From positions 9,278,784-9,342,783 of the forward strand of contig CM121341.1 in the NCBI GenBank assembly GCA_051530055.1: a DNA stretch of 64,000 bases. The letters run 5' to 3'. Each line of letters starts with the position of its first letter. The first letter of the stretch is position 1. Both the position numbers and the translations under genes were made by a program. Below are positions 10,896 through 49,369 of this stretch, one piece after another. Below the pieces are notes generated by a model. It saw nothing but the letters and a program-made list of their open reading frames with translations. It was not told the DNA's origin and searched no databases. This DNA comes from Neoechinorhynchus agilis (Eukaryota > Animalia > Acanthocephala).

Positions 10896-11446
10896 AAATG
10901 GTAGCAAATTTTTCGGAGTTTATCTGCGGTTATTTAATTTTTTATACTCGAACAATAGAATATTGAATGCTCGTGCGATATTGCTGAAATCAAAAACGCG
11001 ATTACCATTAAACGTCAAATAACATCAAATATTGAGCTTCTTCGCAAAGTATTTACTTCAGAATTTCCTTGATTTCGTGCCATGAAGGTTTTCGTTTTAA
11101 ACCAAAAAAATCTCCAACTGAACAATCTTTTCCGTTTGTCAACATCGTGAACAATTTATTTATTATTTCGTTTTCACGACCAGAGTCAATTGAGGGATTC
11201 CACAAAGATTAATTGGCCACAAATAATGCTTAAGGGTAAATAAATTACTTTATAAAATTTTTCGGCTCCTTCAGTTTTCGGTTTCAAATGACTATGCAAA
11301 GATATAGTTACTGACCGCCATACAAACGTTCAACGATATGAAATCCAAGGTTCAATAAATGCATCACAGGAAGATAGGTATTTTTTTGTTTTTTTATGTA
11401 AACAAAGGTCTGTTTTTAAGTTTTTTTTACTGGCAAGCCGGTATGT

Positions 11447-13362: not shown

Positions 13363-13393
13363 AATATTTCGTGAGTTAACCTCGCCTCATCAG
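13363..13393 (-). ncRNA. Minimal hammerhead ribozyme (3' pLTR of the Penelope element), stem II partly decayed
   Basis: CUGAUGA-G-GCGAGG(UUA)ACUCAC-GAAA-UAU-U. Confidence 0.65.
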
Positions 13394-26061: not shown

Positions 26062-26415
26062 TCAAAGTTTCAAGAACGGAATCTTCCCAGGAGGAGCTGT
26101 GTATCCATTACATCGAGCGTCCGAGCAGATAACATTTATAACTGGCGGTTCATCGATAACACACGGACAAGGTCCGCAAGTTTCTAAACATGGACTAGGA
26201 CATTGAGTAATGCACTTCGGAGGCAGTGGACAGCATCGATCTTCACTCTGAAAACATCCTCTAGTCTTAATGATATTCACCTTTTGGGTCGCAGAATTTA
26301 CGTTGAAATTATCCAGTTCACACGAACAAGTCTTTTTTACGGGTGCATTGGTCGACAATGCGGCGACGTTCACTGCCGAGTAGATAATCGAGAAAAAGAC
26401 AAGGAAAGTCAACAT
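26062..26415 (-). CDS. Secreted cysteine-rich protein, C-terminally truncated duplicate
   Basis: Near-identical to 26589-26978 up to TAPP, then runs into unrelated GKIPFLKL*. Confidence 0.55.
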   Translation of the reverse strand: MLTFLVFFSIIYSAVNVAALSTNAPVKKTCSCELDNFNVNSATQKVNIIKTRGCFQSEDRCCPLPPKCITQCPSPCLETCGPCPCVIDEPPVINVICSDARCNGYTAPPGKIPFLKL

Positions 26416-26588
26416 TTTGTCAGCTAAGAACGGGATTTCGTTTTCATTTATACTAACGAAATTTACACAACAAAGGATAGAACTTGAACACATCGCGTAT
26501 TTTTACAATCATGGCGACGAAAACCATTAAAGAGCCTCCAAATGCCAATCTACTTTTTATTTCTAAGTCTCTAAAAAAGCTCTCAATC

Positions 26589-26978
26589 TCAACAGCACTT
26601 TAGACAACATCCAGGTTGATAAGTTGGACAATTTTGGTTGTGCTGGCAATAAGGAGGAGCTGTGTATCCATTACATCGAGCGTCCGAGCAGATAACATTT
26701 ATAACTGGCGGTTCATCGATAACACACGGACAAGGTCCGCAAGTTTCTAAACATGGACGAGGACATTGAGTAATGCACTTCGGAGGCAGTGGACAGCATC
26801 GATCTTCACTCTGAAAGCATCCTCTAGTCTTAATGATATTCACCTTTTGGGTCGCAGAATTTACGTTGAAATTATCCAGTTCACACGAACAAGTCTTTTT
26901 TACGGGTGCATTCGTCGACAATGCGGCGACGTTCACTGTCGAGTAGATAATCGAGAAAAAGACAAGGAAAGTCAACAT
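26589..26978 (-). CDS. Secreted cysteine-rich protein (129 aa, 19 Cys)
   Basis: Signal-peptide-like MLTFLVFFSIIYSTVNVAALS, internal CxxxCxxxCxxxC run (CITQCPRPCLETC), ends GCCLKCC*. Confidence 0.7.
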   Translation of the reverse strand: MLTFLVFFSIIYSTVNVAALSTNAPVKKTCSCELDNFNVNSATQKVNIIKTRGCFQSEDRCCPLPPKCITQCPRPCLETCGPCPCVIDEPPVINVICSDARCNGYTAPPYCQHNQNCPTYQPGCCLKCC

Positions 26979-27149
26979 TTTGTCAGCTAAGAACGGGATT
27001 TCGCCTTCATTTATACTAACGAAATTTACACAACAAAGGATAAAACTTGAACACATCGCGTATTTTTACAATCATGGCGACGAAAACCATAAAAGAGCCT
27101 CCAAATGCCAATCTACTTTTTTTCATATTTAGAAGGAAAAAAATGAGTG

Positions 27150-27509: not shown

Positions 27510-28075
27510 CACGATTGGTAACGCAATATCCATGCCCTTTATCCTGCAGAATTACCGGTCGATATTTCTCTGCTTATTTGGGTTGTATAAAGCAAGCCGC
27601 AAAATAGTTAAATCCGTTCTCGGCGAGAATTACACTTTAGATGAAGATTTCGTTGAGGCGCTTAATTTTTGGTGTTGTGATTCAGGCAGCGAGCAGGTAC
27701 CCGTCAATGGTTGTAAACAATCAGTTTAACACTCACCCGAACGGACATCCTCCGACCGGATTTGCAAATCCGACTAAACCCGCAATTCACTCGAAAATCA
27801 GCAACCACGTGGACCTTAGTCGAAATTATTATTTTGTTTTCTTTGGCGTCTAGGCACTTGGGTCGTTTGGTACCGCAGAACTTGGTCAAGCAATTGTCCA
27901 AGAGATTGAGACGAATCACTGGCGATCTTAGATCAGGAGCATTCCTCCTACAAAACGTAAGTCCAACTCTGCAACGAGGGAACGCTGCATCCGTCCTCTC
28001 GACCGTTACACCAGGACGGCAGCTGAGTGATCCAGAAAGGCGGTGGTGTGAATCATTTCATGTCTACTTATTTTA
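27510..28075 (+). mobile_element. CRE-like element 3' portion, internally deleted
   Basis: WCCDSGSEQVPVNGCKQS is homologous to CQQTGANHVPVDGLRQS at 3.9 kb; LVKQLSKRLRRITGDLRSGAFLLQNVS..QRGNAASVL. Confidence 0.75.
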
Positions 28076-28499
28076 AATGAAAAAGTTTTAAACACTTTAG
28101 ATGATTCAATTTATAAAATTGTAGTCTTTTCCACATGAAATCGACAAAATGAAGTTCAATAAAGGTAATACCTGTAAAGAAATGTTATTTTGATTAATTT
28201 TGACGTTTATGTATTTATTAAATGAACGGTTGGACTTTCTTGGCTCTCCCAATGCCCTTTAAAAGCTTTGAACGAATTTAAGTCATCTTTTGACTGCACT
28301 AACGAGGACGGCTAAATTGACTTATGGAACACGGTAAAGAAAAATCATCGTCTAATTCAAGCTACATTCGTTTATATATTGAGCAAAAATGATTGATTTC
28401 AAACAATTGTTTCTGAAATCAGATTGTAAGAAAATAAGAAAATGTACATTTTCAACAACAGCAACATTTCTTTGAACTTTTCTCTCACTTGAGAGGTCG

Positions 28500-29770
28500 T
28501 TCTTTTCAGCGCGGCGACACAGCGTTCTCGCAAATCGACGAACACACTGTGCAACGAGCACTGAACCTCTTATACAGCTGCCTTAGCACGAATATTGCAT
28601 CGATTGTGCTTCTGACCGGCATGAATCCTCGTTGGTCCTCGCTGATTCGGATCTCCTCTCTTATCCTGTGATCGATCATTCGTTTCCACAATTTCATTGT
28701 GTGAGACATGAGTTTGATGCCGCGGTAGCTCCTACACTGCAGAACATCTCCTTTGCCTTTGAAGATCGGTATCAATATACTTCCCTGTCATTCCCACGGG
28801 ATCTTTTCCTCCATATCTATCTTCTGAAAGAGCCTCGTAACCAAGTTTATTCCGAGGACTCCGAAGGTTTGTCACAGCTCGATCGGAATGTTATCTGGAC
28901 CGGCGTTCCTACCAGTCTTCATTTTCTTGAGCGGTGTAACCACCTCATCGTACGACTACGGCCTCGTCATATTGACATTCGGGTGTACGTCCTCTAGAGA
29001 CAGTCTGTCATTCTCAGTGTTCAGTAGAGTGCTGAAATATTCCTTCCACCTATCCAAAATGTCCTTGCATCGGTCCAGCGTCGTTCCGTGGCTATCACCG
29101 ATCATTTTGAGGTGCACAATATCCCGTGTTTTTTTATCCCTGACTTTGGCCAACCTGAAGACCATATCTATACAACTCCCTCGCTGTAATTGCTCGTACA
29201 GGTCGTTATTGGCTTCCCTCTTGGTTTGGCACATTCTCGTGCATCCTTCCTTTTTGCCTGTTTGTAAACGTCTGCATTCGAGGCCGAAGCGTCAAAATCC
29301 AATCTTTTCCTGGCTGATTTTTTCAAACTGATTGCATCCTTGACGGCTGGATTCCACCACCATGCCTCTTTGTTTTGGGGTGGAGGTTTCCCCGATGTCA
29401 TTCCTAGGATGTTCTTTGTTTCACTACAAATCGCTTCGGCTGTCTCATTCCACTAGCTTTCCAGTTCAGCCACATTCTCGCCCAATTTCTGGGTAAGCAC
29501 CATTTTAATCTTTTCCCTGAGTATAGGATCCTTTAGCCTCCACCACTTGATTTTAGGTGCAATGCTCATTGTCCGCTGGTTGGCTTTCCCTCGAATATTG
29601 AGGTCCATCTCGAGCACTCTATTTTGCGTCGTGCACTCCTCTCCCAGTATTATCTCTACATTCTGAACTTCACCCCATCTCCCTATCGGATACAAAATGA
29701 AATCGATTTGGCTTGATCAACCACCGCTTGAGTTTGTGTAAAGGCGTCGTGGGTGTTTTTTTGAAGTAAA
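28500..29770 (-). mobile_element. RTE-clade LINE remnant (left-arm copy)
   Basis: QIDFIL, KEAWWWN, ILDRWKEYFSTLLN, IPIFKGKGDVLQCRSYRGIKLMSHTMKLW, QRGFMPVRSTIDAIF. Confidence 0.85.
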
Positions 29771-30061
29771 CTTGATCCGGTTAGTAAATCTGGGAATATT
29801 GAACAAAACAGAATGCACTTTAATAGCGATGGCTTCTAAAATCATTCACGTTTTACATTTTTGTACCTTACTACCGATGAGCAGTTCCATTACGCGTTCA
29901 AGAAATAAGAATGTGAATAAAAACCTTTGTAAACAAAAAAAGACCAAACACGAGAATTTAAGTGATATTTAACATTATCAATATTTACAACGATAATGTT
30001 CATTAGGTAATTGATTTTCCATAAAAACAAACGACCAAAATTATTGTTTAGAAGTCTTCGC

Positions 30062-30207
30062 CCGGTAAATGATTATTTATTAAAGGCGTTCTGCAAACTT
30101 CGTCGGGTTCATCATCAGTTTGTTAGTAGTGGACGCTTTTGATCAACAAACTAATGATGAACCCGACGAAGTTCGCAGAACGTCTTTAATAAATAATCAT
30201 TTACTGG
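30062..30207. repeat. Long hairpin formed by an inverted pair of decayed hammerhead/pLTR units (mirror copy at 40021-40166)
   Basis: aaatgattatttattaaaggcgttctgcaaacttcgtcgggttcatcatcagtttgtt ... aacaaactaatgatgaacccgacgaagttcgcagaacgtctttaataaataatcattt. Confidence 0.85.
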
Positions 30208-30980
30208 GTGAAGACTTCTAAATAATAATTCCAATCACATTCCCTGGTGCCTCACATATCGACATTTTTATAAAATGACTTAAAGATAATTCTTGTATCA
30301 AATGTACTGCAAGCTTGGAGGGTGTTTTTATCGCTTGCGATTGTGCTCGAATTGCGTTCACCAATTACCGCATCTATCGTTTCCTTTAACCTCCGCCGAA
30401 AAATAAGAAAATCTGTTCTAAAAAATGAAAACAGAATTTATTCAGCTTGATAGCAATTATAATGCCGCGTAGTAACTATTGAGAAATCAACAGTTTTGCA
30501 ACTATATGAGCATTTCGTTAAGCGCTTCGTCTGTCGGCAAAAAGTATTCATTTTCTATTAGAAATGCTCGAGACTGCTTGATCTTTTTTAAAAAGATTTT
30601 ATCATAATAATCCAAGCATTCTATTTGATGACTCAAGCAATGGCGGCGTCCACATTGAACGTGGAGGTAAATTCATTGCTCTGGTTGAAATTAAATCAGT
30701 GAATAGTCACTAAAACTTCTACGAACGCTCACAATGGGTGGGCAGCACAAATCGTCTTAAAAAGAGTTTCGCAATTATACAAAGTATCCCTTTGCATCCG
30801 TTCCTTTACATTGCTTCCATTGTTATGCTCTAGAATGCTATTAGTTTCCCACTTGACGAAATAGTTCCTTATTCCGCATCCCAGAACGTAACAAATCTAC
30901 CATCCACGCCCTTAGCGTTACTTTGAGACTTTTACTGCCGTAGAAAACTCTACGATAAAACCAGCGATTTCCTGCGCTAT

Positions 30981-31140
30981 CAGCAGTAGTCGACTAATGC
31001 CCTTGATCACAGTTAAGGGTCAACGGATTCGAATCCGTTAACGCCGATGACGCACAACCAAAGGGGACGAAATATTTCGTTGAAGGGAGGAAACTCAGGG
31101 ATGAGTCCCGCCTCCTGGAGGCACGTGAGGATCCGGAGAG
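30981..31140 (+). mobile_element. tRNA-derived SINE copy
   Basis: gactaatgccc..ggattcgaatccgtta..gggacgaaa..ggaggaaactca.ggatgagtcccgcctcctggagg; homologous to 11755-11929. Confidence 0.7.
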
Positions 31141-32689
31141 ATTCTTTTATGATTGTCCAAAACAATTTTTAAATTTTATTTTTCAACCTTTTCCGGTTTT
31201 CTGGACTTCAAAATCATTCATCGCACTGATGAAAGCATTTAGAATTTCTCGACGAACTCGATTGCTCATTTACAAATCGAAGTAGAAATGAGAAAACACC
31301 GCTTAGTAAAGACTACGCTCCGTCCTTAAACTCAATGATTTAATCAATTCATCTTTCAGGCATCCTCAGAGTTGAAAACCAAAATGTTGAGATTCTTCTT
31401 TGAAGGATCTGCGCCCATTGTACCAGTAGTTACAAGAGAACTAAACGTGCCGGAGAATAAATTCTCGACTATCAGTCTAGCAGTGATATTCCGGGGAACA
31501 TTTAGCAACTCTTTACTCCCCCGCCTGAGGCTCCTCTCCATTCGACAGCGAACTGCGCGGAATGTTGCAAATACCGCAGCCGAGCAGTCCTTGATGGTAT
31601 TCCATGTTTTTTCGGGCCGACGGTGGTGCCAGAGGCAACAACTCATAAATCGGGGAAACTACATGGATCGTAGCTCCTGCAGGAATAGCAACAATGAAGA
31701 ATTCTCAAAAAAAAGGGGCAACAGCAAACGAATAAAAACCCAAACAATAAAGGGCACTTCGAAATGGTGTACAACGAATTAAAAATAGAAAAGACTCAAC
31801 TCTAAAAGACTGATTTTTTAATAACAACATTGTAAAGTGTTTGATAACTGGGTAATAAATGCATGCCCAGCTAAATGGATCGTCATCTAAATAGCGACGT
31901 TCATGAATGGATTATTGAGTTTCCTACTGTCGCTGTCTGCAGCCTAGCGAAATCCTAGCCAAGGGTACGGACGGCAATTCCTAAATACGAAACGAAATGC
32001 AAAATATTTAAAGTTTACTTGTCGAAACCGTGATCATCATCGATTTCGCTATTATAGAAAAACAAGTCATTAAAATGGGTTTTTTTTCAGTATGCAGAAA
32101 AAATATCATTTATAAAAATCAAAATGAGCCTTATAGAAGAAAGACAAAATTGCAAAACAGCGCTCGAAGTAGTTTTGCAATATCGAATAAAACAAAATAT
32201 CGCACTCATATTTTTTGTATTTGACTCAAAAAAGTTCAACTCTCGCTAAAATCATTGATAGAAGCAAACATTTTAAGATCAAAATGCTACATCGCTATAT
32301 ATTCATGACCTGGGCTTTAATTTTCCAAGATCCAACATTTTTAAAAAGCTTTGACCTCTAATTCGTTGTAGAAACACAAAACGGATATATCCCATTTCTA
32401 AAGATCAGCGAACGTAACCTGACGACCGTAAACATAAAATTAGTTCGAATGAATTTTAGTATCGAGTTTCAAACTTAAAAGATCGAAGAAATATTGAACT
32501 ATCCTAGGCCTTCGATGATCGCGTTAAGTTTAAGCTTGAAACAATCAAGTTCTCTTCTTCCCAATGCGCAAGGTTGATAAGATTAAAATCCGTCCAATCA
32601 GAATTCAAGAAAATTTTTTGCATCACTATGGCAACTTTTCATCCTTAAACGTTTCACTTTTGTAATATTGCGGCTTTAATACTAGTAAA

Positions 32690-33298: not shown

Positions 33299-34308
33299 GA
33301 ATAAAGTAGTTTCTAAATTGGTTTCCGCGTTACTTTCAATCGTTTGCGTGTTTCGTCTTTGTTCGAAATTAATGACAAAGTTTCCCAACGTTTTTGCGCT
33401 TAACGTTACACTTTAGAAATTGAGATAAAGCTGAACTTGGAGACGTGCTCTTAAATTTATTTAATGAAATGATCTCAATTAAGTGAATGTAAATCTGTTC
33501 ACCGATTGGTCAGAAAGTTTTTCTAGTTGTTAGCATTTCAGGATATATTTATTTCGCAACTTTTGAAAAAACGCAATGTTCTAATAACGGTTTTAGCATT
33601 TTAAAGGCACAAGTAGAGACTTTAAGTGATTATAGACCGGATAATAAAGGTGGGTTTAAGTTTTATTCACATTTGAAACACCCCGCGCCATAAATTTTAC
33701 CTTTTGAACCCCGTAATCGCTACATAAATCTTTAGATTTGGACAATGAACTCGTTTCTGGAAACATTAGCGTCGAATTTACGCACAAAAAGCTATCGTAA
33801 CCAATAACCTCAACAATCCGAATAAAGCATAAGTACCATCATCGCATGCTACCGCCGTCCCTCTAACCAATCGCTTTTAAAGAATAGCCTAAAACATATT
33901 TCACATCTTAAAAACTCGAATAGTAACCGAATCGCTAACTTCTTTGACTATGCGCAATTCCATAGGCGCCCGAAAGGCCATAAAAGACAACCACATAATT
34001 TTTCCACATTAAACACAATTTTCCTTCCGAAACAAATATAAAGTTATCACCGAGTCCCTACATCATTATACCATAAATCGGCTCATCCAATTGTCTCTGA
34101 TCCAACCATTGCCGATCGAAAACTTATATCGAATCCTCCCTTAATTTATCTTCCACGACAACCAAAACAGTCGTAATCTCCTTCATTTCCACAGGACGTT
34201 CGTCTTTCAAAAATCGGAAATGTCCTTTGCTAAATGCACTTAGTTGAAAATATTCGATTAGTGGCGTCAAACAAATCGAATTGATTTGCAGCATATAAAC
34301 GATTCCTA

Positions 34309-35871
34309 TTAACGACGTGATCGGTTTCTAGTACGTCGTTGATGGCTGCGTGGGGCCAGCGCATTAGGATTGTAAGCCATTCGATAATTTTCTCCTTGCG
34401 GCATTTGCATTCGTGTAGGAAACTGAGGAATTCCTTGAAAATTATTCGGTTGTTGCGAACTCCATCGTGCTCCATCGTAATAGTTTTGAAGGTTATGTAC
34501 CATTCTCGATGGATTGGATTGGTTTGCTCGATGATATAGTCGCTGTGGGAAACGTTCATTAATATAGGGCCTTTCGGCGCAATATCCTCCAGGATAAACT
34601 TCCATACTATTTGGCACCGATTGATTTATCATTCGGAAATATCCTGGTCGATAGACGTACTCATTAGAGGTCGATAATGAAGTTCCTTGGAAATTGTTAT
34701 AGGCATTGCTCATGGGTTGCGCCTGAGGTTGAACCGCAATCAAATCGTAAGGGGTCCACGTTTGCGGATACCTTTGCAATTGGTAAGAATGCTGCGAGTA
34801 GGCATTTCCTCGGTTGTCTTGTTGTATTGGATAGCGTCCTCGCGGCATCGACAGATCCAACGGAACTTCCTGTTGACTGCTCATTGGTTGAACAAAACTT
34901 GCACCGTGCGATGGTATAGACGCCATGTAGTTAGATTGAACACTCGTATTGGCATTTTGCTGTCGTTGGGGTTGAATCGATCGTTGGTGGCTGCGATTTA
35001 TTTGCTGCTGTTGGGAGAAGGATTGTCCCATTTGAACCAATGGCCATTGAGTTAATCCAGTGGAAGCGCCATACGATGAAACTCGCTGAACTGACTTATC
35101 GGGATCGTTACGATCAGGACGTGAACGTTTCACTTCAGTTTCATTCTGATGTTGCTCGTCTTTTGCGGTCGTTTCGTGTTCCGTTAACCTTCTCTTTGGT
35201 TCAGCTACTACTGATTTATCCGAAAGTTCAACATCAGCTGTACGTTTTCTGGGTTTACTGGAAGATCTCGCGGGTTTGTTTGTTTTCTTCGAAATTTCTA
35301 GCAGGGGTTCAACTATTTTAAATTTCTCCATCATCTCCTCGGCGCTTGTACCCGAAAGTTGGAGCATTTCATTGCCATGAGCGGTGATTTTTACGCTTGA
35401 TTCCCTAAACCAAATTTCTCCGACTTTGGAGAACTCTGGATAATAATATACCCGCTTTACAGTTTTCCTCAAATCTGGCAACTTCATTGCTTCCCAATTA
35501 TTAAATAACAAGTCAAGGTCAACGCAATATTTTAAAGTTATATTCAATCCGATATTTGTAATCGAATAATCGCTCATTTGTCCGGCTCTGAGGCAAATGT
35601 TACCAATGAGTTCAGCAACATGATTAGAAAATAACTTTGCTCCGTCTTGTACTTCGCTTTGTACATTTACGACGACTTTCCCACTTCTAAAAATGCGAGC
35701 CGTTGCACCAGGAAACATCAAATCTTCACGATCATTTGGTACAGTGTATAAGATTGTTGGTCCTTTTTGCAATTCCGTATGCGGCATTTTCCTCTTGAGT
35801 TCGACAAGACTCACTTCGTTCATTTTGAATTTTGCACTGCAGTTGTAGGCGGTAGTGAGAGACGATGTCAT
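34309..35871 (-). CDS. Highly divergent TBP-fold (TBP-related factor) protein with long Q/N/S/Y-rich C-terminus and PLDLS motif
   Basis: [15 protein letters not shown] ~ [38 protein letters not shown] ~ [44 protein letters not shown] ~ [36 protein letters not shown] ~ AFENIYPILKGFRKT. Intact 520-aa ORF. Confidence 0.8.
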   Translation of the reverse strand: [520 protein letters not shown]

Positions 35872-35974
35872 TTTTGTCTAAAGTAAAAGTAAGTTGAAAT
35901 CTACTTCTGTTTATAAATTTAAAGCAAATTCGATACAAGGAGGCTATGTGGGCCAATTTTTTCAAGTTTAGGAG

Positions 35975-37600
35975 AACTATTCGGCTGAAGCACCTTCTAT
36001 TGAACTTCGAAGTTCTAAATACATAAGGCCGAGCAATTTGTTTGTTTCTTTGCTATTAAATATTTGGGGGGGGGACTCTCCCTCACTCTGAAAGGTCAGA
36101 AAAGTGATAAACTGTCTGACAAATAATCTTTCCGATTGAGTGACCCCTCCACGACCAATAAGCAGAGCCTCGGCAATGGAAAGGTCTACAGGATCAGGTG
36201 CCCTGTAGAGAACCCCCACCCAAAGCTTTAGCAAAATGGGTGGCCAACGGTGCTGACGCGTACGACGGTGCGTGCGGGTTACATGCATTACAGAAATGCT
36301 CAGTTACCCGCTGGTGTAGCCTCCGCTCCGTCTTTCCAATGTAGCTGCAGGATTTCCTCTGGTCCTTGCAATTGCCGCATGTGATCCGGTATACCACATT
36401 GCTCATCATGCAGGCTCCCATCGGACTTCATCGTCCATCTTCATTGTCCAATTGACATTGAATGCACCTTTTTGGACAATTCTCCTGATCCTCGTGGTGA
36501 TTAGTCCCCATCAGAAGTATCGTTTGAATGGTATTTTACTACCATTCCCTAAAAGCAACAGTTCCGATTGGTGAGACTGTTTCTTCTATTAATGCTTGAC
36601 TTAACGACGGCACACGGAATCATATTGCCCGTTCGTTTCGATTTTTGGGAACCACAAAATCCTGTATTTTAAGGTATCCTCAAAGTCTGGGCGGTCGTCA
36701 GTATCCAAATATGGCATTTAACCTGGAGCGATGAATGTTGTGTCATAGTTTCCCTTACTAATCTTGACCCCTTCCAAATCGCAATGCATTGACCCAAAGT
36801 TGAAGATTTGCTCAGTGAAACGCTCATTGAGGAAATAAATTTTAAGACTGTCCACGAATTACGAAACTGATTTTATACGTCCATTGTCGTCTTTGGTACT
36901 GTTTTTAAATAAGGAGCAAGAAAACGAGATTCTCTAAATGGAATCGGATTTGATGGACACGATACTCGGCCATTTCTTGATTGGCAGCAGAGTCTGTTCT
37001 TTGGTTTTTTGTGATGAAAGGAATTCCTTGAGTTTCAAATACAATGGAATTTTGAGCGTATTAAATGGCCGCCGACTACTCTTCACCGTCCCTCCACGAT
37101 CATCTTCAGGATCGGGCGGTTTTAAATTATTGATTGAGAAGCTGACACTATTTTCGCTTCAACGAAATTCGCCACATTCAAAAAAAGAATTTATTCACAC
37201 ACGGATGGGCTGGTTTGAATAATAAGTAGAACAACCATCAGTTGGCGAGCGCGGTCCATTTGTCCACTTTTGTGGTCCAGTCGACGCAGTTGGCCCATGC
37301 GAGGGGGAGAACAGAGCTGAGTCTCAGGAATGTGCAGCTCTGGCGTTGTTCGGGCGGCCGTCCTCTAGAATAGAAGACTAGAAAAGATATAGCCATGAGT
37401 TCAAAATAGATCTGCATGAATTGGGTTTGAGGCCTAGTCGGACAACACGCTTTTTCTTGGAATTGGCAATTTTCAGTAGGCGTATCATCTTATTCATGTC
37501 GGCCGAGTCAAAAAATCCTTGACGAACTCTCTAATCTGTCGCCTACCATGGGCGGATCTCGATTTTATTAAAGATTTGGTCTTATTCAAGGCAAGACCCA
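35975..37600 (-). mobile_element. Degenerate Penelope-like element
   Basis: NVVYRITCGNC..YIGKTERRLHQRVTEH GIY-YIG domain, with decayed RT upstream. Confidence 0.75.
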
Positions 37601-39087
37601 TGTGAGGTAGTTTTTCTTTTAAAATTTTTAGTACTGCAGCAAGTTTTCGCTCGAGCTTGCACATAGTTACGTTCCTTAATTACCACAGTCAGGTCGTCCG
37701 CCTCGCTCAAGGCTCAAACCGTCCATATCTCCCAAATGAATTTCCGACTATCTGCGATGATCCATCGAATCCAATCACTGAAAATGAAGGCATTTTAAAA
37801 GCTTCAAGATCTTCTATTTGAAGTGGCTCGTCGGCTAAGAAGGTCGCATTATACCATTTCGGAGACATCTCGAGAATCTCTCGTGCACATCAACCCGTTC
37901 GTTTCGATTTTTGGGAACCACAAAATACTGTAGTCGTATTACGAGGAAAACTAAAATCACAGCTTCTATCAATGATTTTAGCGAGAGTTGAACTTTTTTG
38001 AGTCAAATACAAAAAATATGAGTGCGATATTTTGTTTTATTCGATATTGCAAAACTACTTCGAGCGCTGTTTTGCAATTTTGTCTTTCTTCTATAAGGCT
38101 CATTTTGATTTTTATAAATGATATTTTTTCTGCATACTGAAAAAAAACCCATTTTAATGACTTGTTTTTCTATAATAGCGAAATCGATGATGATCACGGT
38201 TTCGACAAGTAAACTTTAAATATTTTGCATTTCGTTTCGTATTTAGGAATTGCCGTCCGTACCCTTGGCTAGGATTTCGCTAGGCTGCAGACAGCGACAG
38301 TAGGAAACTCAATAATCCATTCATGAACGTCGCTATTTAGATGACGATCCATTTAGCTGGGCATGCATTTATTACCCAGTTATCAAACACTTTACAATGT
38401 TGTTATTATAAGATCAGTCTTTTAGAGTTGAATCTTTTCTATTTTTAATTCGTTGTACACCATTTCGAAGTGCCCTTTATTGTTTGGGTTTTTAATCGTT
38501 TGCTGTTGCCCCCTTTTTTTTGAGAATTCTTCATTGTTGCTATTCCTGCAGGAGCTACGATCCATGTAGTTTCCCCGATTTATGAGTTGTTGCCTCTGGC
38601 ACCACCGTCGGCCCGAAAAAACATGGAATACCATCAAGGACTGCTCGGCTGCGGTATTTGCAACATTCCGCGCAGTTCGCTGTCGAATGGAGAGAAGCCT
38701 CAGGCGGGGGAGTAAAGAGTTGCTAAATGTTCCCCGGAATATCACTGCTAGACTGATAGTCGAGAATTTATTCTCCGGCACGTTTAGTTCTCTTGTAACT
38801 ACTGGTACAATGGGCGCAGATCCTTCAAAGAAGAATCTCAACATTTTGGTTTTCAACTCTGAGGATGCATGAAAGATGAATTGATTAAATCATTGAGTTT
38901 AAGGACGGAGCGTAGTCTTTACTAAGCGGTGTTTTCTCATTTCTACTTCGATTTGTAAATGAGCAATCGAGTTCGTCGAGAAATTCTAAATGCTTTCATC
39001 AGTGCGATGAATGATTTTGAAGTCCAGAAAACCGGAAAAGGTTGAAAAATAAAATTTAAAAATTGTTTTGGACAATCATAAAAGGAT

Positions 39088-39245
39088 CTCTCCGGATCCT
39101 CACGTGCCTCCAGGAGGCGGGACTCATCCGTGAGTTTCCTCCCTTCAACGAAATATTTCGTCCCCTTTGGTTGTGCGTCATCGGTGGTAACGGATTCGAA
39201 TCCGTTGACCCTTAACTGTGATCAAGGGCATTAGTCGACTACTGC
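39088..39245 (-). mobile_element. tRNA-derived SINE copy (mirror of 30981-31140)
   Basis: Same sequence in the inverted arm. Confidence 0.7.
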
Positions 39246-40459
39246 TGATAGCGCACGAAATCGCTGGTTTAATCGTAGAGTTTTCTACGGCAGCAAAAGT
39301 CTCAAAGTAACGCTAAGAGCGTAGATGGTAGATTTGTTACGTTCTGGGATGCGGAATAAAGAACTATTTCGTCAAGTGGGAAACTAATAGCATTCTAGAG
39401 CATAACAATGGAAGCAATGTAAAGGAACGGATGCAAAGGGATACTTTGTACAATTGCGAAACTCTTTTTAAGACGATTTGTGCTGCCCACCCATTGTGAG
39501 CGTTCGTAGAAGTTTTAGTGACTATTCACTGATTTAATTTCAACCAGAGCAATGAATTTACCTGCATGTTCAATGTGGACGCCGCCATTGCTTGAGTCAT
39601 CAAATAGAATGCTTGGATTATTATGATAAAATCTTTTTAAAAAAGATCAAGCAGTCTCGAGCATTTCTAATAGAAAATGAATACTTTTTGCCGACAGACG
39701 AAGCGCTTAACGAAATGCTCATATAGTTGCAAAACTGTTGATTTCTCAATAGTTACTACGCGGCATTATAATTGCTATCAAGCTGAATAAATTCTGTTTT
39801 CATTTTTTAGAACAGATTTTCTTATTTTTCGGCGGAGGTTAAAGGAAACGAAAGATGCGGTAATTGGTGAACGCAATTCGAGCACAATCGCAAGCGATAA
39901 AAACACCCTCCAAGCTTGCAGTACATTTGATACAAGAATTATCTTTAAGTCGTTTTATAAAAATGTCGATATGTGAGGCACCAGGGAATGTGATTGGAAT
40001 TATTATATAGAAGTCTTCACCCAGTAAATGATTATTTATTAAAGACGTACTGCGAACCTCGTCGGGTTCATCATTAGTTTGTTGATCAAAAGCGTCCACT
40101 ACTAACAAACTGATGATGAACCCGACGAAGTTTGCAGAACGTCTTTAATAAATAATCATTTACCGGGCGAAGACTTCTAAACAATAATTTTAGTCGTTTG
40201 TTTTTATGTAAAATCAATTACCTAATGAACATTATCGTTGTAAATATTGATAATGTTAAATATCACTTAAATTCTCGTGTTTGGTCTTTTTTTGTTTACA
40301 AAGGTTTTTATTCACATTCTTATTTCTTGAACGCGTAATGGAACTGCTCATCGGTAGTAAGGTACAAAAATGTAAAACGTGAATGATTTTAGAAGCCATC
40401 GCTATTAAAGTGCATTCTGTTTTGTTCAATATTCCCAGATTTACTAACCGGATCAAGTT

Positions 40460-42110
40460 TACTTCAAAAAAACACCCACGACGCCTTTACACAAACTCAA
40501 GCGGTGGTTGATCAAGCCAAATCGATTTCATTTTGTATCCGATAGGGAGATGGGGTGAAGTTCAGAATGTAGAGATAATACTGGGAGAGGAGTGCACGAC
40601 GCAAAATAGAGTGCTCGAGATGGACCTCAATATTCGAGGGAAAGCCAACCAGCGGACAATGAGCATTGCACCTAAAATCAAGTGGTGGAGGCTAAAGGAT
40701 CCTATACTCAGGGAAAAGATTAAAATGGTGCTTACCCAGAAATTGGGCGAGAATGTGGCTGAACTGGAAAGCTAGTGGAATGAGACAGCCGAAGCGATTT
40801 GTAGTGAAACAAAGAACATCCTAGGAATGACATCGGGGAAACCTCCACCCCAAAACAAAGAGGCATGGTGGTGGAATCCAGCCGTCAAGGACGCAATCAG
40901 TTTGAAAAAATCAGCCAGGAAAAGATTGGATTTTGACGCTTCGGCCACGAATGCAGACGCTTACAAGCAGGCAAAAAGGAAGGATGCACGAGAATGTGCC
41001 AAACCAAGAGGGAAGCCAATAACGACCTGTACGAGCAATTACAGCGAGGGAGTTGTATAGATATGGTCTTCAGGTTGGCCAAAGTCAGGGATAAAAAAAC
41101 ACGGGATATTGTGCACCTCAAAATGATCGGTGATAGCCACGGAACGACGCTGGACCAATACAAGGACATTTTGGATAGGTGGAAGGAATGTTTCAGCACT
41201 CTACTGAACACACCCGAATGTCAATATGACGAGGCCGTAGTCGTACGATGAGGTGGTTACACCGCTCAAGAAAATGAAGACTGGTAGGAACGCCGGTCAA
41301 GATAACATTCCGATCGAGCTGTGACAAACCTTCGGAGTCCTCGGAATAAACTTGGTTAGAACGCTATGTCGCCGCGATCCAGGCGATGTATCGAGAATGC
41401 TACACCTTGGTGCGATGCCACAGCGGATCCATTTACTATTTTCGAGTCCCCGTGGGTCTGCAATAGGGTTCGGCTCTGAGCCCATTCTTGTTCACGATCG
41501 TAACGTCCTAGGGAATGCGGAAAGAGAAATGAACGCACCATGGACGATACTATTCGCGGACGATTAGTTGCTCAGAGCTAGGGACGTGGACACTCTCAGG
41601 AATTTGCTGGAGAGTTGGCGACAGCGATTAGAGAGTAACGGATTGAGAGCGAGCAGGCGCAAAATGAAATATCGGACAAAGAGTTCAATGGAACAACTGG
41701 ATGAAGACAATTGGCATAATTTGCGATAAGCGTCTCCCGAACAAGCTTAAACGGCGGGTGTACAAGGCAGTAGTGGGAACCGCCATGCTCTACGGAGCAG
41801 AAACGGTGGCTACGAAGAAGGAAGACGTTCAACGATTAGCCATCAACGAAATGCGGATGCTGAGATGGTCCGCAGGATTGACACTTAAGGAATAAGTGCC
41901 CAATGAGGAGGTGCGAAAGCTGTTTGTTGTCGATCCGATCGAGGAGGCAATCGCTTAGAAGCGGATGGGATGGTACCTGCAGGTGACACAAGCAGATGAA
42001 GACGCAGCTCGGGGGGAAAAGGAGAAGAGGGAGGCCCAAGAAGAGGTGGAAGGAAAGTGTGAGAGGAGATCTCAAGATGCTGGGAAAGGAGAAAAAGACG
42101 AAAACCGATA
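40460..42110 (+). mobile_element. RTE-clade LINE remnant (right-arm copy)
   Basis: WTILFADD, LKRRVYKAVVGTAMLYGAETVA, EMRMLRWSAG, GKRRRGRPKKRW. Confidence 0.85.
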
Positions 42111-42539
42111 ATGCTGAAAAGAACGACCTCTCAAGTGAGAGAAAAGTTCAAAGAAATGTTGTTGAAAATGTACATTTTCTTATTTTATTACAATCTGATT
42201 TCAGAAACAGTTGTTTGAAATCAATCATTTTTGCTCAATATATAAACGAATGTATCTTGAATTAGACGATGAATTTTCCTTACCGTGTTCCATCAGTCAA
42301 TTTAGCCGCCCTCGTTAGTGCAGTCAAAAGATGACTTAAATTCGTTAAAAGCTTTTAAAGGGCATTGGGAGAGCCAAGAAAATCCAACCGTTCATTTAAC
42401 AAATACATAAACGTCAAAATTAATCAAAATAACATTTCTTTACAGGTATTACCTTTATTGAACTTCATTTTGTCGATTTCATGTGGAAAAGATTACAATT
42501 AATCATTTAACCTGTTTAAAACTTTTTCATTTAAAATAA

Positions 42540-43345
42540 GTAGACATGAAATGATTCACACCACAGCCTTTCTGGATCACTCAGCTGCCGTCCTGGTGTA
42601 ACGGTCGAAAGGACGGATGCAGCGTTCCTTCGTTGCAGAGTTGGACTTATGTTTTGTAGGAGGAATGCTCCGAACCGCCTGGTCTACGGCGGTCATCGAG
42701 TCGGCAAAGATTGCTCGGCCCTAGGATGTTGGGCGTTTTCACAGAATTCAGGGCACGGCTAAGGGAATTGCGTTCACTTCAGCGTGCCGTGAGTACCTCT
42801 CGTCTGATTGCCGACGGACGATTCCCGTGGCATCCCGATGGTTCTACAGTCGCTCCGCAACGGCAGCGATGGGATGTGCACATCCGTACCCCAAGTCTCA
42901 GGGACACTGCGGTCTTTACTGTCTCACCGGAGGGGACCGACAAAAGCGATTGGGATAGCTTGAAATTTAATTGTTCATATAGGTTGTTTTCTGGCGTAGT
43001 AATCAAAATAATTTTAATTTCGACGCCAGAAAACAACCGATTCGGATAGCATTGAGCCAAGCACCCGATTATCTTGTAGAGACTGCCGCCAATCGAGTTC
43101 GGTTCACCAGGTCACAAGAATCTGAAATTAAAGAGTTATGAATTCTCGCTACCAGCCGCGAGTGTTAAACTGATTGTTTACAACCATTGACGGGTACCTG
43201 CTCGCTGCCTGAATATCCACACCAAAGATTAAGCGCCTCTACGAAATCTTCATCCAAAGTGTAATTCTCGCCGAGAACGGATATAACTATTTTGCGTATT
43301 GCTTCAAACGATCCCAAATAAGCAGAGAAATATCGTGGCATAAGA
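42540..43345 (-). mobile_element. CRE-like element 3' portion (right arm)
   Basis: SLRLGVRMCTSHRCRCGATVEPSGCHG zinc finger plus the shared 3' end. Confidence 0.75.
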
Positions 43346-44179
43346 TACAAACCCGCCGGACGACACAGGCAAAGACGCTTGACGCCAAGCTTCGTCCGAC
43401 AGCTGAGTATTTAAAATTCCCCGAGAGAGTCTTTCACCTTCTCGTCTAATTTTTCCAGCTTATCCTTATGTATAAAATAGGTGCTGTGCAAAGTTTATAC
43501 ATCAGTTTTGGAATGAAGAGGGTATTCTTGATCAGGAACAGATCCTCATGTGAAGATAATTCATCAACTCGTTCACACAGTACCCAAAGTTACGGTTGAA
43601 GATTGGCAATCTCTGCTTCCCTATTTAATTTCAATATCCACTACTTATATTGCTTAAGAAATACACAACAATAAAGATTCGGTTGAGATTAGACACTCAT
43701 AGAATTTGAGATTATTTTTTATTCGGCTTCAAAATAATTCGTATTCATTGCTAGACTGTATAATTTCATAGAAGCACAATTTTGCAATCCTAGAAAATAC
43801 CTTTTTTCTGAATTAGTATCCTTAATAAAGAATTTTTTGATCAGAGTAACCACTGTAACGAGTTTTATTTCCGCATTTGAATGCTTCATGGAGATACCGT
43901 TGTTAAAGGTACTATTATCTATATAGTTTCAAATTTCAGCCTAATGGCAGTTCTTCAGTTCTGCAACATTGATGTGAAGAAATTGGACCCATCGTAGGTT
44001 TCTCTGAGAACGAATAATAGACTGTTCAAACTCACGTATTAAGCACATGTAAAGATTAACAAGCTGAACGTCGAGTACGCGACATTGGAAGACGCAAGAT
44101 TTGCAGAATCATATTTTCGTTCCATTGTAACATATTGAAGCCATCAAAAGCTAACCGATTTCAAACTCATGGATTCCAC

Positions 44180-45310
44180 CCATCGGAGAAATTTGGTTCA
44201 AGGAATCAAGCGTAAAATCATTGCTCACGGCAGCGCCGAGGAAATAATGTAGAAATTTCAAATAGTAGTTCCTTTGCTGAACAAAAGAGAAGGTAAACTG
44301 AACAAGAAATGGTCGCAAAAAGCGAGCAAAAAAGAGAGGATTGACGGTACAAGAAATGGTGACAAAAGACGAGCAAAAGAGAAGATTAACTCAAAAAGAA
44401 ATGGTCGAAAACGACAAGCAACAATGAAACTGAAGTTGAAGTGAAACGTTCAAGTCGTAATCGTACCGATATGTCAATTCAGCGAGTTTCATCGTGTGGC
44501 GTTTCCATTGGCTCAACTCAATGATCATTGGTTCAAATGGGACAATCCTTCTCCCAACCACAGCAGATAAATCGAAGCCACCAACGATCGAGTAATGTTC
44601 CAATACGAGTGTTCAATCTCACTACATGACGTCTTGACCGTCTTACGGTGGAAGTTTTGTTCCACCAATGAGCAGTCAACAGGAAGTTCCGTTAGATCTA
44701 TCGATGCCGCGAGGACGCTATCCAGTACAACAAGACAACCAAGCGAATGTCTACTCATAGCATTCTTACCAATTATAAAGGTATCCGCGGACGTGGACCC
44801 CTTACGATTTGATTGCGATTCAACCTCAGGCGCAACCCATGAGCAATGTCAACAACAATTTCTAAGGAACTTCATTATCGACAAATCAATCGATGCCAAA
44901 TAGTATGGAAGTTTATCCTGGAGGATACTACACAGAAACTTCTTATGTTAATGAACGTCTTACACAGCTACTAAATCATCGAGGAAACCGTTTCAATCAA
45001 TCGAGAATAGTACATAATTTTCAAAACTATTACGACGATGGAGTGAGTACGAGTAGCAAAAGCCGAATAACTTTCAAAGAATTCCCAAATTTCCTCTTAT
45101 TAAGACAGGAACAAAATTCACGCGAATGCAAGTGCCGCATGGAACAAATTATCAAATAGCTTACGATCCAAATGAGCGGTTCCTACTGAGCCATCGACGA
45201 AGTATTGGGAGAGGTTTATGATCCATCGAGCAGTTCGTTTTGGTTTACGGCGATACGACCTTTTATTTTGAAACACTAAAGTCCATAATGATTTTTCTAT
45301 AAGCAAATAT
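44180..45310 (+). pseudogene. Decayed, 5'-truncated paralog of the TBP-fold gene
   Basis: IGEIWFKESSVKIIAHG..SAEEIM*KFQIVVPLL, QQEVPLDLSMPRGR, SMPNSMEVYPGGY; stops, indels; inverted relative to 34309-35871. Confidence 0.85.
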
Positions 45311-48480: not shown

Positions 48481-49369
48481 TAGTGTGTTAATATCCTTTG
48501 CTAACTTGTGGCCAAACAAAGAGTAATATGCCAGTGATCGGTCTGACCTTCAGAAATGGTTTGTGGACCTCTGGTAGCAGGTACATGAAGCCCGGCTCCG
48601 CATTAGCAGATCTTATTCTCGCATACCAGTTTTGGGTAATTTTCCCGGCCCGGAGGCTGAGGCCTTGGAAATTCGCAAGATTGATTTCAATAAAACTCGA
48701 GTGTGTTACAATTCGTCATTGAGAATACACATCCACTCGAAGGAGCAATTGGATAGAATTATGCGGTATTTTAATTTTCGTAAAGAAATTAATCATTATT
48801 GTTTCAATTTCAATTAGCGATATTCACTCAGAAATAGATTCATATTGAAAATTTTCGGCCTTTTCGTTGGCCTTCTTCAGTCAGATCTACAATTTAAAAG
48901 AAACATTATCAATTAGTTTATCCGGTGGGACTCGTCCTGTTTGCTGGATCATGGTGGCTTCCATGGTCACTGTCGCGTCTTACGTCACTTTCCTTTTAAT
49001 TTCATAGCTAGGGCTCACAATACTTCGCAGTTCAAGCGGTTCTTTTTCACGGATTACCCCACCCGCTCGATCTACTTTCAGGATAAAGGAGTTCCACAAG
49101 GCTCTCCCCTATCATCGATTCTTTTCTGCTTGGCATCTCAATGCATAGATCGAAACTGCAAAGTCTGTCGTTCTATCATCATGGATTCGATGGATCATCG
49201 CAGATAGTCGGAAATTCATTTGGGAGATATGGACGGTTTGAGCCTTGAGCGAGGCGGACGACCTGACTGCGGTAATTAAGGAACGTAACTATGTGCAAGC
49301 TCGAGCGTGTTGTTGAACTCCATCTGAGTAACTGGTGGTTGAGTTGAGCGGTAAATAGTGGCGGAAATG

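What the first reader, a model, noticed from the sequence alone, without database searches (positions are those of the whole stretch)
34309..35871. TBP-fold protein with inverted architecture and a CtBP-binding PLDLS motif
Seen: an intact, intronless 520-aa ORF. Its first ~195 aa align with both TBP repeats; the rest is a basic KPRKR stretch plus ~300 aa of Q/N/S/Y-rich low complexity containing an exact PLDLS (34849-34863). Known: TBP, TRF2 and TRF3 normally carry the core at the C-terminus. TATA binding uses four intercalating Phe; here only the IF of repeat 1 is clearly retained and the repeat-2 IF position reads AH. PLDLS is the canonical CtBP corepressor-docking motif. Inference: a lineage-specific, probably non-TATA-binding TBP-related factor that may recruit a corepressor or form condensates, i.e. 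a basal-factor fold turned regulator.
Basis: partly seen in the sequence, partly recalled or inferred. Interest (0 to 1): 0.85.

Follow-up and report, generated by a model that had tools for sequence, protein, structure and literature searches.

The report
Divergent TBP-like factor with disordered tail
This intact gene of the fish-parasitic thorny-headed worm Neoechinorhynchus agilis is one of several recent copies of a species-restricted, very divergent relative of the TATA-binding protein (derived from the worm's own TRF2-like gene) that has gained a long disordered tail; it is an unusual variant of a well-known family, and the proposed CtBP link is untested.

Summary
An intact, unspliced 520-aa ORF lies at 34309-35871 on the minus strand, with KPRKR at aa 206-210 and PLDLS at aa 337-341 (34849-34863).

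Residues ~3-197 are a real but extremely divergent two-repeat TBP-family domain. Alone they miss the Pfam cut-off (17.5 vs 22.9 bits). They hit one protein outside their own family among 1.8 billion: the worm's own TRF2-like gene P0004 (E 1.2e-6). Both share an 11-residue insertion that TBP lacks. A low-confidence model matches only TBPs (Z up to 11.3).

One of the four TATA-kinking Phe remains (F61).

The genome is Neoechinorhynchus agilis. It holds at least three intact copies (97-98% identical) and several broken ones. Between copies the core is under purifying selection (5 synonymous : 0 non-synonymous changes). The tail changes at about the neutral rate.

RNA-library contigs cover the locus, but the transcribed strand is unresolved.

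"Inverted architecture" is overstated, since vertebrate TLF has no N-terminal domain. The CtBP and condensate ideas remain speculation: a motif-class match arises in 5.5% of shuffled tails.

The scan had already found this family on a paralogue 130 kb away (s1-037839).

The parts
34309..35871 (-). Complete single-exon CDS, 520 aa plus stop. It matches NCBI model ACOME3_002193 (P0005) from aa 51 on.
   Evidence: P0005 aa 51-558 is 100 % identical to 35835-34312; RNA-library contigs run unspliced through the ATG
35593..35865 (-). TBP-like repeat 1 (aa 3-93), with the order S1-H1-S2-S3-S4-S5-H2. It holds the only retained intercalating Phe (F61, 35689-35691).
   Evidence: Pfam PF00352 E 0.0038 over aa 10-82; secondary structure of the model; alignment to TBP
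35707..35739 (-). Enlarged S2-S3 stirrup loop [11 protein letters not shown] (aa 45-55), 6 residues longer than in P0004 and TBP. In TBP this is the TFIIA-facing stirrup (from general knowledge, not tested).
   Evidence: alignment A2 and profile alignment to yeast TBP
35281..35577 (-). TBP-like repeat 2 (aa 99-197). The positions of human F284 and F301 read S148 (F147 adjacent) and H165.
   Evidence: BLASTP to P0004, 26 % identity over aa 54-194, E 1e-15 pairwise; phmmer E 1.2e-6 library-wide
35455..35490 (-). Insertion between the repeats (aa 128-139, [12 protein letters not shown]; 11 extra residues relative to TBP). It is shared with P0004 and absent from TBP.
   Evidence: HMMER alignments to TBP show the same 11-residue gap for the A2 profile and for P0004 alone; ORF versus P0004 is gapless here
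35119..35289 (-). Basic, NLS-like linker (aa 195-251) with KKTNK, KPRKR (35242-35256), KRR and KRSR.
   Evidence: a nuclear-localisation role is inferred from composition only
34312..35061 (-). Q/S/R/P/N/Y-rich tail (aa 271-520) with no predicted secondary structure. It ends in the basic cluster [13 protein letters not shown] (34312-34350).
   Evidence: composition and hydropathy; no secondary structure in the full-length model, which is otherwise uninformative at pLDDT 28.8; dN/dS of about 1-2 between copies
34849..34863 (-). Exact PLDLS (aa 337-341), a CtBP-type PxDLS motif by sequence only.
   Evidence: Kept in the three intact copies and in the pseudogene at 44.2-45.2 kb; PLDPS in the P0002 fragment
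33883..36068 (-). Core duplication unit shared at 95.6-98.5 % with the paralogue locus L001: the CDS, 197 nt upstream and about 430 nt downstream.
   Evidence: blastn and MAFFT against L001 and L002; elevated RNA-library depth over about 33.9-36.2 kb
44182..45200 (+). Degenerate partial copy (pseudogene) of the same gene, in inverted orientation. It starts near aa 150 and has many stops and frameshifts.
   Evidence: inverted repeats I4, I8 and I9 at 83-89 %; tblastn; three-frame translation

Best explanation
The ORF is a functional member of a young, species-restricted gene family in Neoechinorhynchus agilis. The family arose from the worm's own TRF2/TLF-like gene lineage, represented by P0004.

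Shown: the protein starts directly with a two-repeat TBP-type domain (aa ~3-197), as vertebrate TLF does. A basic NLS-like linker and a ~250-aa Q/S/R/P/N/Y-rich, probably disordered tail follow.

Inferred mechanism: a nuclear TBP-family 'system factor' that does not kink TATA DNA, because 3 of the 4 intercalating Phe are gone and one stirrup is enlarged. It would act at the pre-initiation step on TATA-less promoters, either by nucleating an alternative complex or by competing for TFIIA/TFIIB-type partners, as is described for TRF2/TLF. The fast-evolving tail would supply accessory contacts.

Also shown: the family relationship, the residue pattern, the copy structure, purifying selection on the core, and presence in RNA libraries. 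Inferred only: nuclear localisation, partners, promoter class, and any role of PLDLS.
For: Homology:
- phmmer of aa 1-205 against 1.84 billion representatives gives one hit outside the family's own copies: P0004, E 1.2e-6, query 52-193 to target 197-337.
- P0004 is a bona fide two-repeat TBP-family protein (PF00352 E 2.7e-27; human TBP core E 1.5e-17).
- On its own the ORF gives Pfam TBP E 0.0038 and PDB TBPs E 0.012.
- 86 of the 100 nearest protein-language-model clusters are TBP.

Fold:
- The AF2 model built with P0004 in the alignment has pLDDT 63.8 and the secondary-structure order 2 x S1-H1-S2-S3-S4-S5-H2.
- The top 44 Foldseek PDB hits are all TBPs, E 4e-9 to 2e-5.
- VIA-align gives Z 8-11.3 over model residues 3-197 for 38 TBP chains.

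Origin:
- The ORF and P0004 share an 11-residue insertion between the repeats.
- P0004 reads S/Y/H/F at the four Phe positions. That fits the TRF2 signature described in PMC4180970 (three Phe altered, including Phe to His).

Function:
- Between intact copies the core shows 5 synonymous and 0 non-synonymous changes (p = 3.8e-4 against neutrality).
- The tail shows 3 and 12. Fisher's test for core versus tail gives p = 0.0036.

Expression:
- Contigs from four RNA libraries cover 33.9-36.2 kb at depth 25-240, against about 0 in flanking bins.
- Both window-type and paralogue-type alleles are present.
Against: - The domain fails Pfam's gathering score (17.5 vs 22.9 bits), and only one repeat is detected directly.
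- The structural model is of low confidence (pTM 0.44, TM about 0.4, rmsd about 9 A) and depended on P0004 being in the alignment. Without P0004 the model collapses to pLDDT 28.8.
- The two halves show no detectable similarity to each other.
- The Phe pattern differs from the TRF2 signature: F210 is kept and F301 is lost.
- The contigs carry no strand. A 51-nt GT..AG skip on the opposite strand (35889-35939) leaves open that part of the signal is antisense.
- The tail shows no constraint (omega 1.1-2.3).
- Several family copies are already dead.
- No phylogeny with TBP and TRF2 could be built.
Confidence: 0.75

Rival explanations
1. One reading: a TBP-fold protein turned regulator that docks the corepressor CtBP through PLDLS in its disordered tail (or forms condensates), and so represses promoters.
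For: - An exact PLDLS lies in a hydrophilic, structure-free region.
- Exact PLDLS arises in 9e-5 and PxDLS in 0.3 % of shuffled tails.
- The motif is kept in all three intact copies and even in the pseudogene at 44.2-45.2 kb.
- PLDLS/PXDLS is the established CtBP-binding motif (PMC5536941, PMC11095456).
- The tail is Tyr/Arg/Gln-rich.
Against: - A match to the degenerate CtBP motif class occurs in 5.5 % of shuffled tails. The motif was also picked post hoc from many possible short motifs.
- All comparisons are between 85-98 % identical paralogues of one species, so retention means little. The P0002 fragment reads PLDPS.
- The tail evolves at omega of about 1-2.
- No CtBP gene of this worm was examined, and no binding was tested.
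Confidence: 0.1
2. A young duplicate drifting towards pseudogenisation: an intact ORF by recency only, with no function of its own. Transcription would be incidental, from neighbouring repeats or antisense.
For: - The family shows birth-and-death turnover. Broken copies lie in the window (44182-45200), in P0002 and in P0003.
- The tail has omega of about 1-2.
- The locus sits in a mosaic of repeats and a Penelope-like remnant.
- The strand of the RNA contigs is unresolved.
Against: - The core has 5-6 variable sites with 0-1 non-synonymous change between copies (p = 3.8e-4), which neutral drift would not give.
- Three copies keep the full 520-codon frame, and the only indel is in frame.
- RNA depth is concentrated on the gene unit.
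Confidence: 0.12
3. A gene carried by a transposon or an integrated virus (giant viruses encode TBP-like proteins), which would explain why it is intronless, multi-copy and flanked by repeats.
For: - The gene is intronless and multi-copy.
- A GIY-YIG (Penelope-like) remnant lies about 330 nt upstream on the same strand (Pfam E 5e-4).
- It is flanked by 99 % inverted repeats.
- Some of the nearest language-model clusters are Nucleocytoviricota TBP-like proteins.
Against: - The only relative is the worm's own P0004, with a shared 11-residue insertion.
- A viral-contig scan and a metagenome scan found nothing.
- The duplicated unit has different ends in different copies, and no terminal repeats bound the 2.2-kb unit.
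- The GIY-YIG remnant lies outside the shared unit, and the copies diverge at 36068.
Confidence: 0.04

Closest known systems
TRF2 / TLF / TBPL1 (TBP-related factor 2), including the worm's own TRF2-like protein P0004 (ACOME3_006278)
   Same: - A two-repeat TBP-type core with most TATA-intercalating Phe replaced.
- The protein starts at the core without an N-terminal domain, as vertebrate TLF does (PMC3142196).
- It shares an 11-residue inter-repeat insertion with P0004.
- Both genes are intronless.
- TRF2 is the fast-evolving branch of the family (PMC4180970).
   Different: - Only 26 % identity to P0004.
- The Phe pattern differs. The ORF reads P/F/S/H, P0004 reads S/Y/H/F, and the TRF2 signature keeps the fourth Phe.
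- There are two extra insertions in repeat 1, one of them in the S2-S3 stirrup.
- A 325-aa basic plus Q/S/R/P/N/Y-rich C-terminal extension is absent from P0004 and vertebrate TLF.
- The gene is amplified to several near-identical copies.
TBP (TATA-box-binding protein, PF00352)
   Same: The same fold and repeat order. All top structural matches are TBPs, covering residues 3-197. The RIFRSGK motif corresponds to TBP's LIFxSGK and keeps that Phe.
   Different: - About 16-21 % identity, and below the Pfam gathering score.
- Three of the four intercalating Phe are lost.
- There are 11-, 5- and 6-residue insertions.
- The variable region is C-terminal, not N-terminal.
Drosophila TRF2 (632-aa short isoform)
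   Same: A TBP-family core embedded in a much longer protein with large non-core regions (PMC4422821, PMC5362240). This shows that extensions beyond the core have precedent.
   Different: There is no sequence relationship outside the core. The position and nature of the fly extensions could not be checked in the papers held. The fly gene is single-copy and conserved among insects; this family is restricted to one species.
PxDLS-motif CtBP partners (e.g. adenovirus E1A, EVI1)
   Same: An exact PLDLS pentapeptide in a region without predicted structure (PMC5536941, PMC11095456).
   Different: There is no evidence of binding, no orthologues to test conservation, and a 5.5 % chance expectation for the motif class.

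Membership tests
TBP family (PF00352, two-repeat saddle) | Score at or above Pfam's gathering threshold for PF00352 | tested here: not met
   17.5 bits against a cut-off of 22.9, E 0.0038, one stretch only (aa 10-82)
TBP family (PF00352, two-repeat saddle) | Statistically significant sequence homology to an undoubted family member | tested here: met
   phmmer E 1.2e-6 in a library of 1.84 billion proteins to P0004, over aa 52-193. P0004 matches PF00352 at E 2.7e-27 with 2 stretches and the human TBP core at E 1.5e-17.
TBP family (PF00352, two-repeat saddle) | Two tandem repeats, each S1-H1-S2-S3-S4-S5-H2, forming the saddle fold | tested here: met
   The model's secondary structure follows this order twice. 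The Foldseek top 44 are all TBPs and VIA-align gives Z up to 11.3 over residues 3-197. Caveats: pLDDT is 63.8, rmsd is about 9 A, and the model depends on P0004 being in the alignment.
TBP proper (TATA-binding) | Four intercalating Phe (human F193, F210, F284, F301) | tested here: not met
   The ORF reads P38, F61, S148 (F147 adjacent) and H165. The role of these residues is described in PMC3142196.
TRF2 / TLF / TBPL1 | Signature of three specific Phe altered (including Phe to Trp and Phe to His) with the fourth kept (PMC4180970) | tested here: not met
   Three of four are altered, but a different set: the second Phe is kept and the fourth is His. P0004 (S/Y/H/F) fits the signature much better.
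TRF2 / TLF / TBPL1 | Placement inside the TRF2 clade in a phylogeny of core domains | not tested
   No TBP or TRF2 sequence set could be obtained. Descent from a P0004-like gene is inferred from best-hit status and the shared 11-residue insertion.
TRF2 / TLF / TBPL1 | Binding to TFIIA and TFIIB; no binding to the TATA box | not testable with these tools
   Sequence hints only: the S2-S3 stirrup is enlarged by 6 residues, and the C-terminal stirrup reads YYPEF where TBP has YEPEL.
CtBP-binding proteins (PxDLS class) | PxDLS motif in an accessible, disordered region | tested here: met
   PLDLS at aa 337-341 lies in a hydrophilic region with no predicted secondary structure.
CtBP-binding proteins (PxDLS class) | Motif more frequent than chance and conserved in orthologues | tested here: inconclusive
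   In shuffled tails: exact PLDLS 9e-5, PxDLS 0.3 %, degenerate motif class 5.5 %. No orthologues exist. The motif is kept in near-identical paralogues, and one fragment reads PLDPS.
CtBP-binding proteins (PxDLS class) | Physical binding to CtBP | not testable with these tools
   Needs yeast two-hybrid or pull-down assays.

The most novel reading that the evidence does not exclude
A TRF2-derived factor has been re-equipped with a fast-evolving disordered tail carrying a corepressor-docking motif, and amplified in a palindrome- and repeat-rich cluster. It would act as a stage- or germline-specific alternative initiation factor or promoter-bound repressor peculiar to acanthocephalans. That would be a basal-factor fold recruited for lineage-specific gene control, perhaps in an arms-race setting, as the birth-and-death turnover and the neighbourhood of transposon remnants hint.
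Probability: 0.1. Interest if true: 0.7.

Novelty: new variant of a known kind. Interest (0 to 1): 0.42.

Why it matters
TBP paralogues (TRF1, TRF2, TRF3) are the textbook case of diversification of the basal transcription machinery, and each known one drives a distinct promoter programme. This is a species-restricted, multi-copy TRF2 derivative with a remodelled DNA-facing surface, an altered stirrup and a new C-terminal tail. Its core is kept under purifying selection while the tail drifts. That would extend the picture to Syndermata, a neglected parasite lineage, and offers a natural experiment on how far the saddle can diverge and still be maintained. It does not open a new category, and the function is not yet testable from sequence alone.

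Tried and rejected
- **Word-based search with the whole protein** found only paralogues from the same species.
- **Search with the P0004 core** found only P0004 itself. No set of TBP and TRF2 sequences could therefore be collected, and no tree was built.
- **Viral and metagenome scans** with the core alignment found no relative. This counts against a viral or environmental origin.
- **Full-length AF2 without P0004** gave pLDDT 28.8. It is useless for the core and only weakly suggestive of a disordered tail.
- **BLASTP of repeat 1 against repeat 2** found no internal similarity.
- **The NCBI 5' exons of model P0005** (about 37641-37868) are not joined to the ORF in any RNA contig. Their loose ends match nothing in the window or the fetched loci. 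That gene model was rejected in favour of the single-exon ORF.
- **Rfam** on the whole window and, at relaxed threshold, on 37900-39400 found nothing.
- **Papers on 'insect TRF4/TRF5'**: none were found in the library, so that comparison could not be made.
- **Rabenstein 1999 and Kopytova 2006** are not held.
- **A poly(A) signal** downstream of the stop was looked for by eye, and no clear AATAAA was seen.
Full report
**1. What is there**

The finding's coordinates hold an intact ORF on the minus strand: 34309-35871, 520 aa, ATG start.
- An in-frame TAG lies two codons upstream, at 35878-35880.
- KPRKR is aa 206-210.
- PLDLS is aa 337-341, which is exactly 34849-34863.
- The last 250 residues are Q 14.8, S 10.4, R 9.6, P 9.2, N 9.2, Y 7.2 %. 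They are hydrophilic and 60-72 % Q/N/S/Y/P/R/G, with an entropy of 3.3-3.8 bits. That is compositional bias rather than strict low complexity.

**2. Organism and gene model**

Protein searches identify the genome as Neoechinorhynchus agilis, an acanthocephalan. The window lies on the 19.4-Mb contig CM121341.1 near 9.31 Mb.

NCBI's model ACOME3_002193 (P0005, 558 aa) is 100 % identical to the ORF from aa 51 on. It replaces the first 13 codons with upstream exons at about 37.6-37.9 kb. Contigs from four RNA libraries show no such junction. They run unspliced through the ATG, for example 35013-36122. The exons at 37.7-37.9 kb are joined to sequence that is not in the window. I therefore take the single-exon 520-aa ORF as the product.

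**3. Is it a TBP fold?**

Alone, the sequence is borderline:
- Pfam PF00352 gives E 0.0038 and 17.5 bits against a cut-off of 22.9, over aa 10-82 only.
- PDB TBPs give E 0.012 over aa 53-122.
- The two halves show no similarity to each other.

The decisive link is a bridge protein. An exhaustive phmmer search of aa 1-205 against 1.84 billion representatives gives three hits. Two are the family's own copies. The third is P0004 (N. agilis ACOME3_006278, 344 aa), at E 1.2e-6 with query 52-193 aligned to target 197-337. The pairwise alignment has 26 % identity over 141 aa with one gap. P0004 is an undoubted TBP-family protein (PF00352 E 2.7e-27 with two stretches; human TBP core E 1.5e-17).

Other lines agree:
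- 86 of the 100 nearest protein-language-model clusters are TBP.
- An AF2 model built on an alignment that includes P0004 has pLDDT 63.8 and the exact order S1-H1-S2-S3-S4-S5-H2, twice.
- Its 44 best Foldseek PDB matches are all TBPs, at E 4e-9 to 2e-5.
- VIA-align gives Z 8-11.3 for 38 TBP chains over model residues 3-197. Unrelated hits follow at Z 8.0 or below (one, a phosphoglucomutase chain, ties the weakest TBP chain at 8.0) and match only half the model.

Caveats:
- TM is about 0.4 and rmsd about 9 A, so the mutual position of the repeats is not modelled.
- Without P0004 in the alignment the model is worthless at pLDDT 28.8.

**4. Residue-level reading**

Alignment to yeast and human TBP maps the four TATA-kinking Phe (human F193, F210, F284, F301; PMC3142196) as follows:

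| Protein | F193 | F210 | F284 | F301 |
|---|---|---|---|---|
| This ORF | P38 | F61 | S148 (F147 next to it) | H165 |
| P0004 | S | Y | H | F |

P0004's pattern matches the TRF2 signature described by Duttke et al. (three Phe altered, including Phe to His, the last kept; PMC4180970). The ORF has a different three-of-four loss.

The ORF and P0004 share an 11-residue insertion between the repeats. The distance between conserved landmarks is 39 residues, against 28 in TBP. This is a derived character that ties the ORF family to the P0004 lineage.

The ORF also has 5- and 6-residue insertions in repeat 1. The second enlarges the S2-S3 stirrup, which in TBP faces TFIIA (general knowledge, untested here). 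The C-terminal stirrup reads YYPEF where TBP has YEPEL.

**5. A young gene family**

Intact copies:
- P0006 (ACOME3_002229, about 160 kb away on the same contig).
- P0001 (an unplaced 6.8-kb contig).
- Both are 97-98 % identical to the window copy.

Broken or partial copies:
- P0003.
- The C-terminal part fused to an RRM gene model in P0002.
- A pseudogene in the window itself at 44182-45200 (+), with many stops and frameshifts.

The shared unit is about 2.2 kb (33883-36068). Outside it the loci are different mosaics of the same repeats.

In the window the gene sits in the 5.7-kb spacer of a 99 % inverted repeat, with arms of about 27577-32275 and 37952-43317. A GIY-YIG (Penelope-like) remnant lies just upstream of the shared unit.

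P0004's gene is intronless too.

**6. Selection**

| Comparison (window vs L002) | Synonymous | Non-synonymous |
|---|---|---|
| Core (aa 1-195) | 5 | 0 |
| Tail | 3 | 12 |

- Over all three copies the core has 6 variable sites, of which 1 is non-synonymous.
- The core departs from neutrality (p = 3.8e-4).
- Core and tail differ (Fisher p = 0.0036).
- Tail omega is 1.1-2.3 across the pairs.

The saddle is thus maintained by selection. The PLDLS-bearing tail shows no detectable constraint. The counts are small.

**7. Expression**

Logan contigs of four RNA libraries cover about 33.9-36.2 kb at summed depth 25-240. Depth is about 0 at 33400-33566 and 38076-38242, and about 5-10 over 36.2-37.6 kb.

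The variant letters in those contigs are the L001/L002 alleles, including the 3-nt deletion at 34968. Other contigs match the window exactly. Several copies are therefore represented.

Contigs have no strand. One form skips 35889-35939 with GT..AG on the plus strand, antisense to the ORF. It is either an antisense intron of the short size usual in this genome or a deletion in an unsampled copy. Sense expression is likely but not proven.

**8. The tail, PLDLS and CtBP**

PLDLS is the canonical CtBP-docking motif (PMC5536941, PMC11095456), and here it lies in a structure-free region.
- In shuffled tails, exact PLDLS arises at 9e-5, PxDLS at 0.3 %, and the degenerate motif class (written from memory of the ELM pattern) at 5.5 %.
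- It is kept in the three intact copies and in the window pseudogene. It reads PLDPS in the P0002 fragment.
- With no orthologues in any other species, conservation cannot be judged.

CtBP recruitment and condensate formation therefore remain conjecture.

**9. Comparison with the known**

The protein works, as far as can be inferred, like TRF2/TLF. It has a TBP-type core that cannot kink TATA DNA and presumably acts at TATA-less promoters or titrates partners (PMC3142196, PMC4422821, PMC4180970).

Family membership:
- It belongs to the TBP superfamily by significant transitive homology and fold.
- It fails the Pfam threshold.
- It fails the TBP Phe criterion.
- It does not show the exact TRF2 signature.

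The 'inverted architecture' is less odd than stated. Vertebrate TLF lacks any N-terminal domain (PMC3142196), and fly TRF2 is 632 aa (PMC4422821, PMC5362240). What is new is the combination of features:
- an extreme N-terminal core;
- a 325-aa basic plus Q/S/R/P/N/Y-rich C-terminal extension;
- extra stirrup residues;
- recent amplification.

**10. Earlier scan notes**

The scan had already met this family on other DNA of the same genome. These include the paralogue 130 kb away (s1-037839), further copies (s1-288763, s1-272167), a broken copy (s1-037909) and other amplified TRF2-like genes (s1-037854). My tests agree with the follow-up reading of s1-037839. They add the core-versus-tail selection contrast, the RNA evidence, the rejection of the NCBI 5' exons and the chance estimate for PLDLS.

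**11. Verdict**

This is a real, intact and probably functional member of a species-restricted, highly divergent TRF2-derived TBP-family clade with an added disordered tail. It is a new variant of a known kind and of moderate interest. The corepressor idea is unproven.

Noticed in passing
window 27577-32275 and 37952-43317: A large inverted repeat (the longest arm segment is 2702 nt at 99 %, followed by further segments at 91-98 %) encloses a 5.7-kb spacer that holds the TBP-like gene. Pieces of the arms recur, in a different order, around the paralogue in L001.
   Followed up: partly
window 43944-45200 (+): A degenerate remnant combines the N-terminus of an RRM-protein gene (70 % identical to P0002 aa 1-82, at 43944-44177) with a stop-ridden partial copy of the TBP-like gene's end of core and tail. 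The same junction exists in NCBI model P0002 (ACOME3_003313), so the chimeric arrangement was itself duplicated.
   Followed up: partly
window 36197-36421 (-), perhaps extending to about 35977: A remnant of a GIY-YIG endonuclease domain (Pfam E 5e-4, below the cut-off), as found at the C-terminus of Penelope-like retroelements. It lies on the same strand just upstream of the unit shared between the gene copies.
   Followed up: partly
window 38243-38400: Summed RNA-contig depth is 3,700-14,600 in all four libraries, against 0 in the neighbouring bin. The site lies inside the right arm of the inverted repeat. No Rfam family matches, even at relaxed threshold, and the overlapping 144-aa ORF has no Pfam hit. 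It is an unidentified, very abundant or very high-copy transcript.
   Followed up: partly
window 35889-35939: Some RNA-library contigs (X1, X4) skip these 51 nt, with GT..AG on the plus strand, antisense to the ORF. Others (X2, X3) read straight through, and the fetched paralogues do not lack the segment. It is either an antisense intron or a deletion in an unsampled copy.
   Followed up: partly
window 37641-37895 (-): Exon-like blocks (e.g. 37750-37843) were used by NCBI as the 5' exons of ACOME3_002193. In RNA contigs they are spliced to sequences absent from the window and the fetched loci, so they belong to another (paralogous) gene. A similar stretch lies at 49120-49236 (+).
   Followed up: partly
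window 26062-26493 and 26589-27056 (-): A tandem pair of near-identical ORFs (143 and 155 aa, with a 300-nt repeat at 99 %). They encode Cys/Pro-rich proteins with a hydrophobic N-terminal stretch (possibly a signal peptide). No family search was run on them.
   Followed up: no
L003 and L004, 5001-6035: The TRF2-like gene P0004 is a single exon and is present as identical protein copies on chromosome-scale contig CM121342.1 and on a 19-kb unplaced contig. The second may be a haplotig or a duplicate.
   Followed up: no
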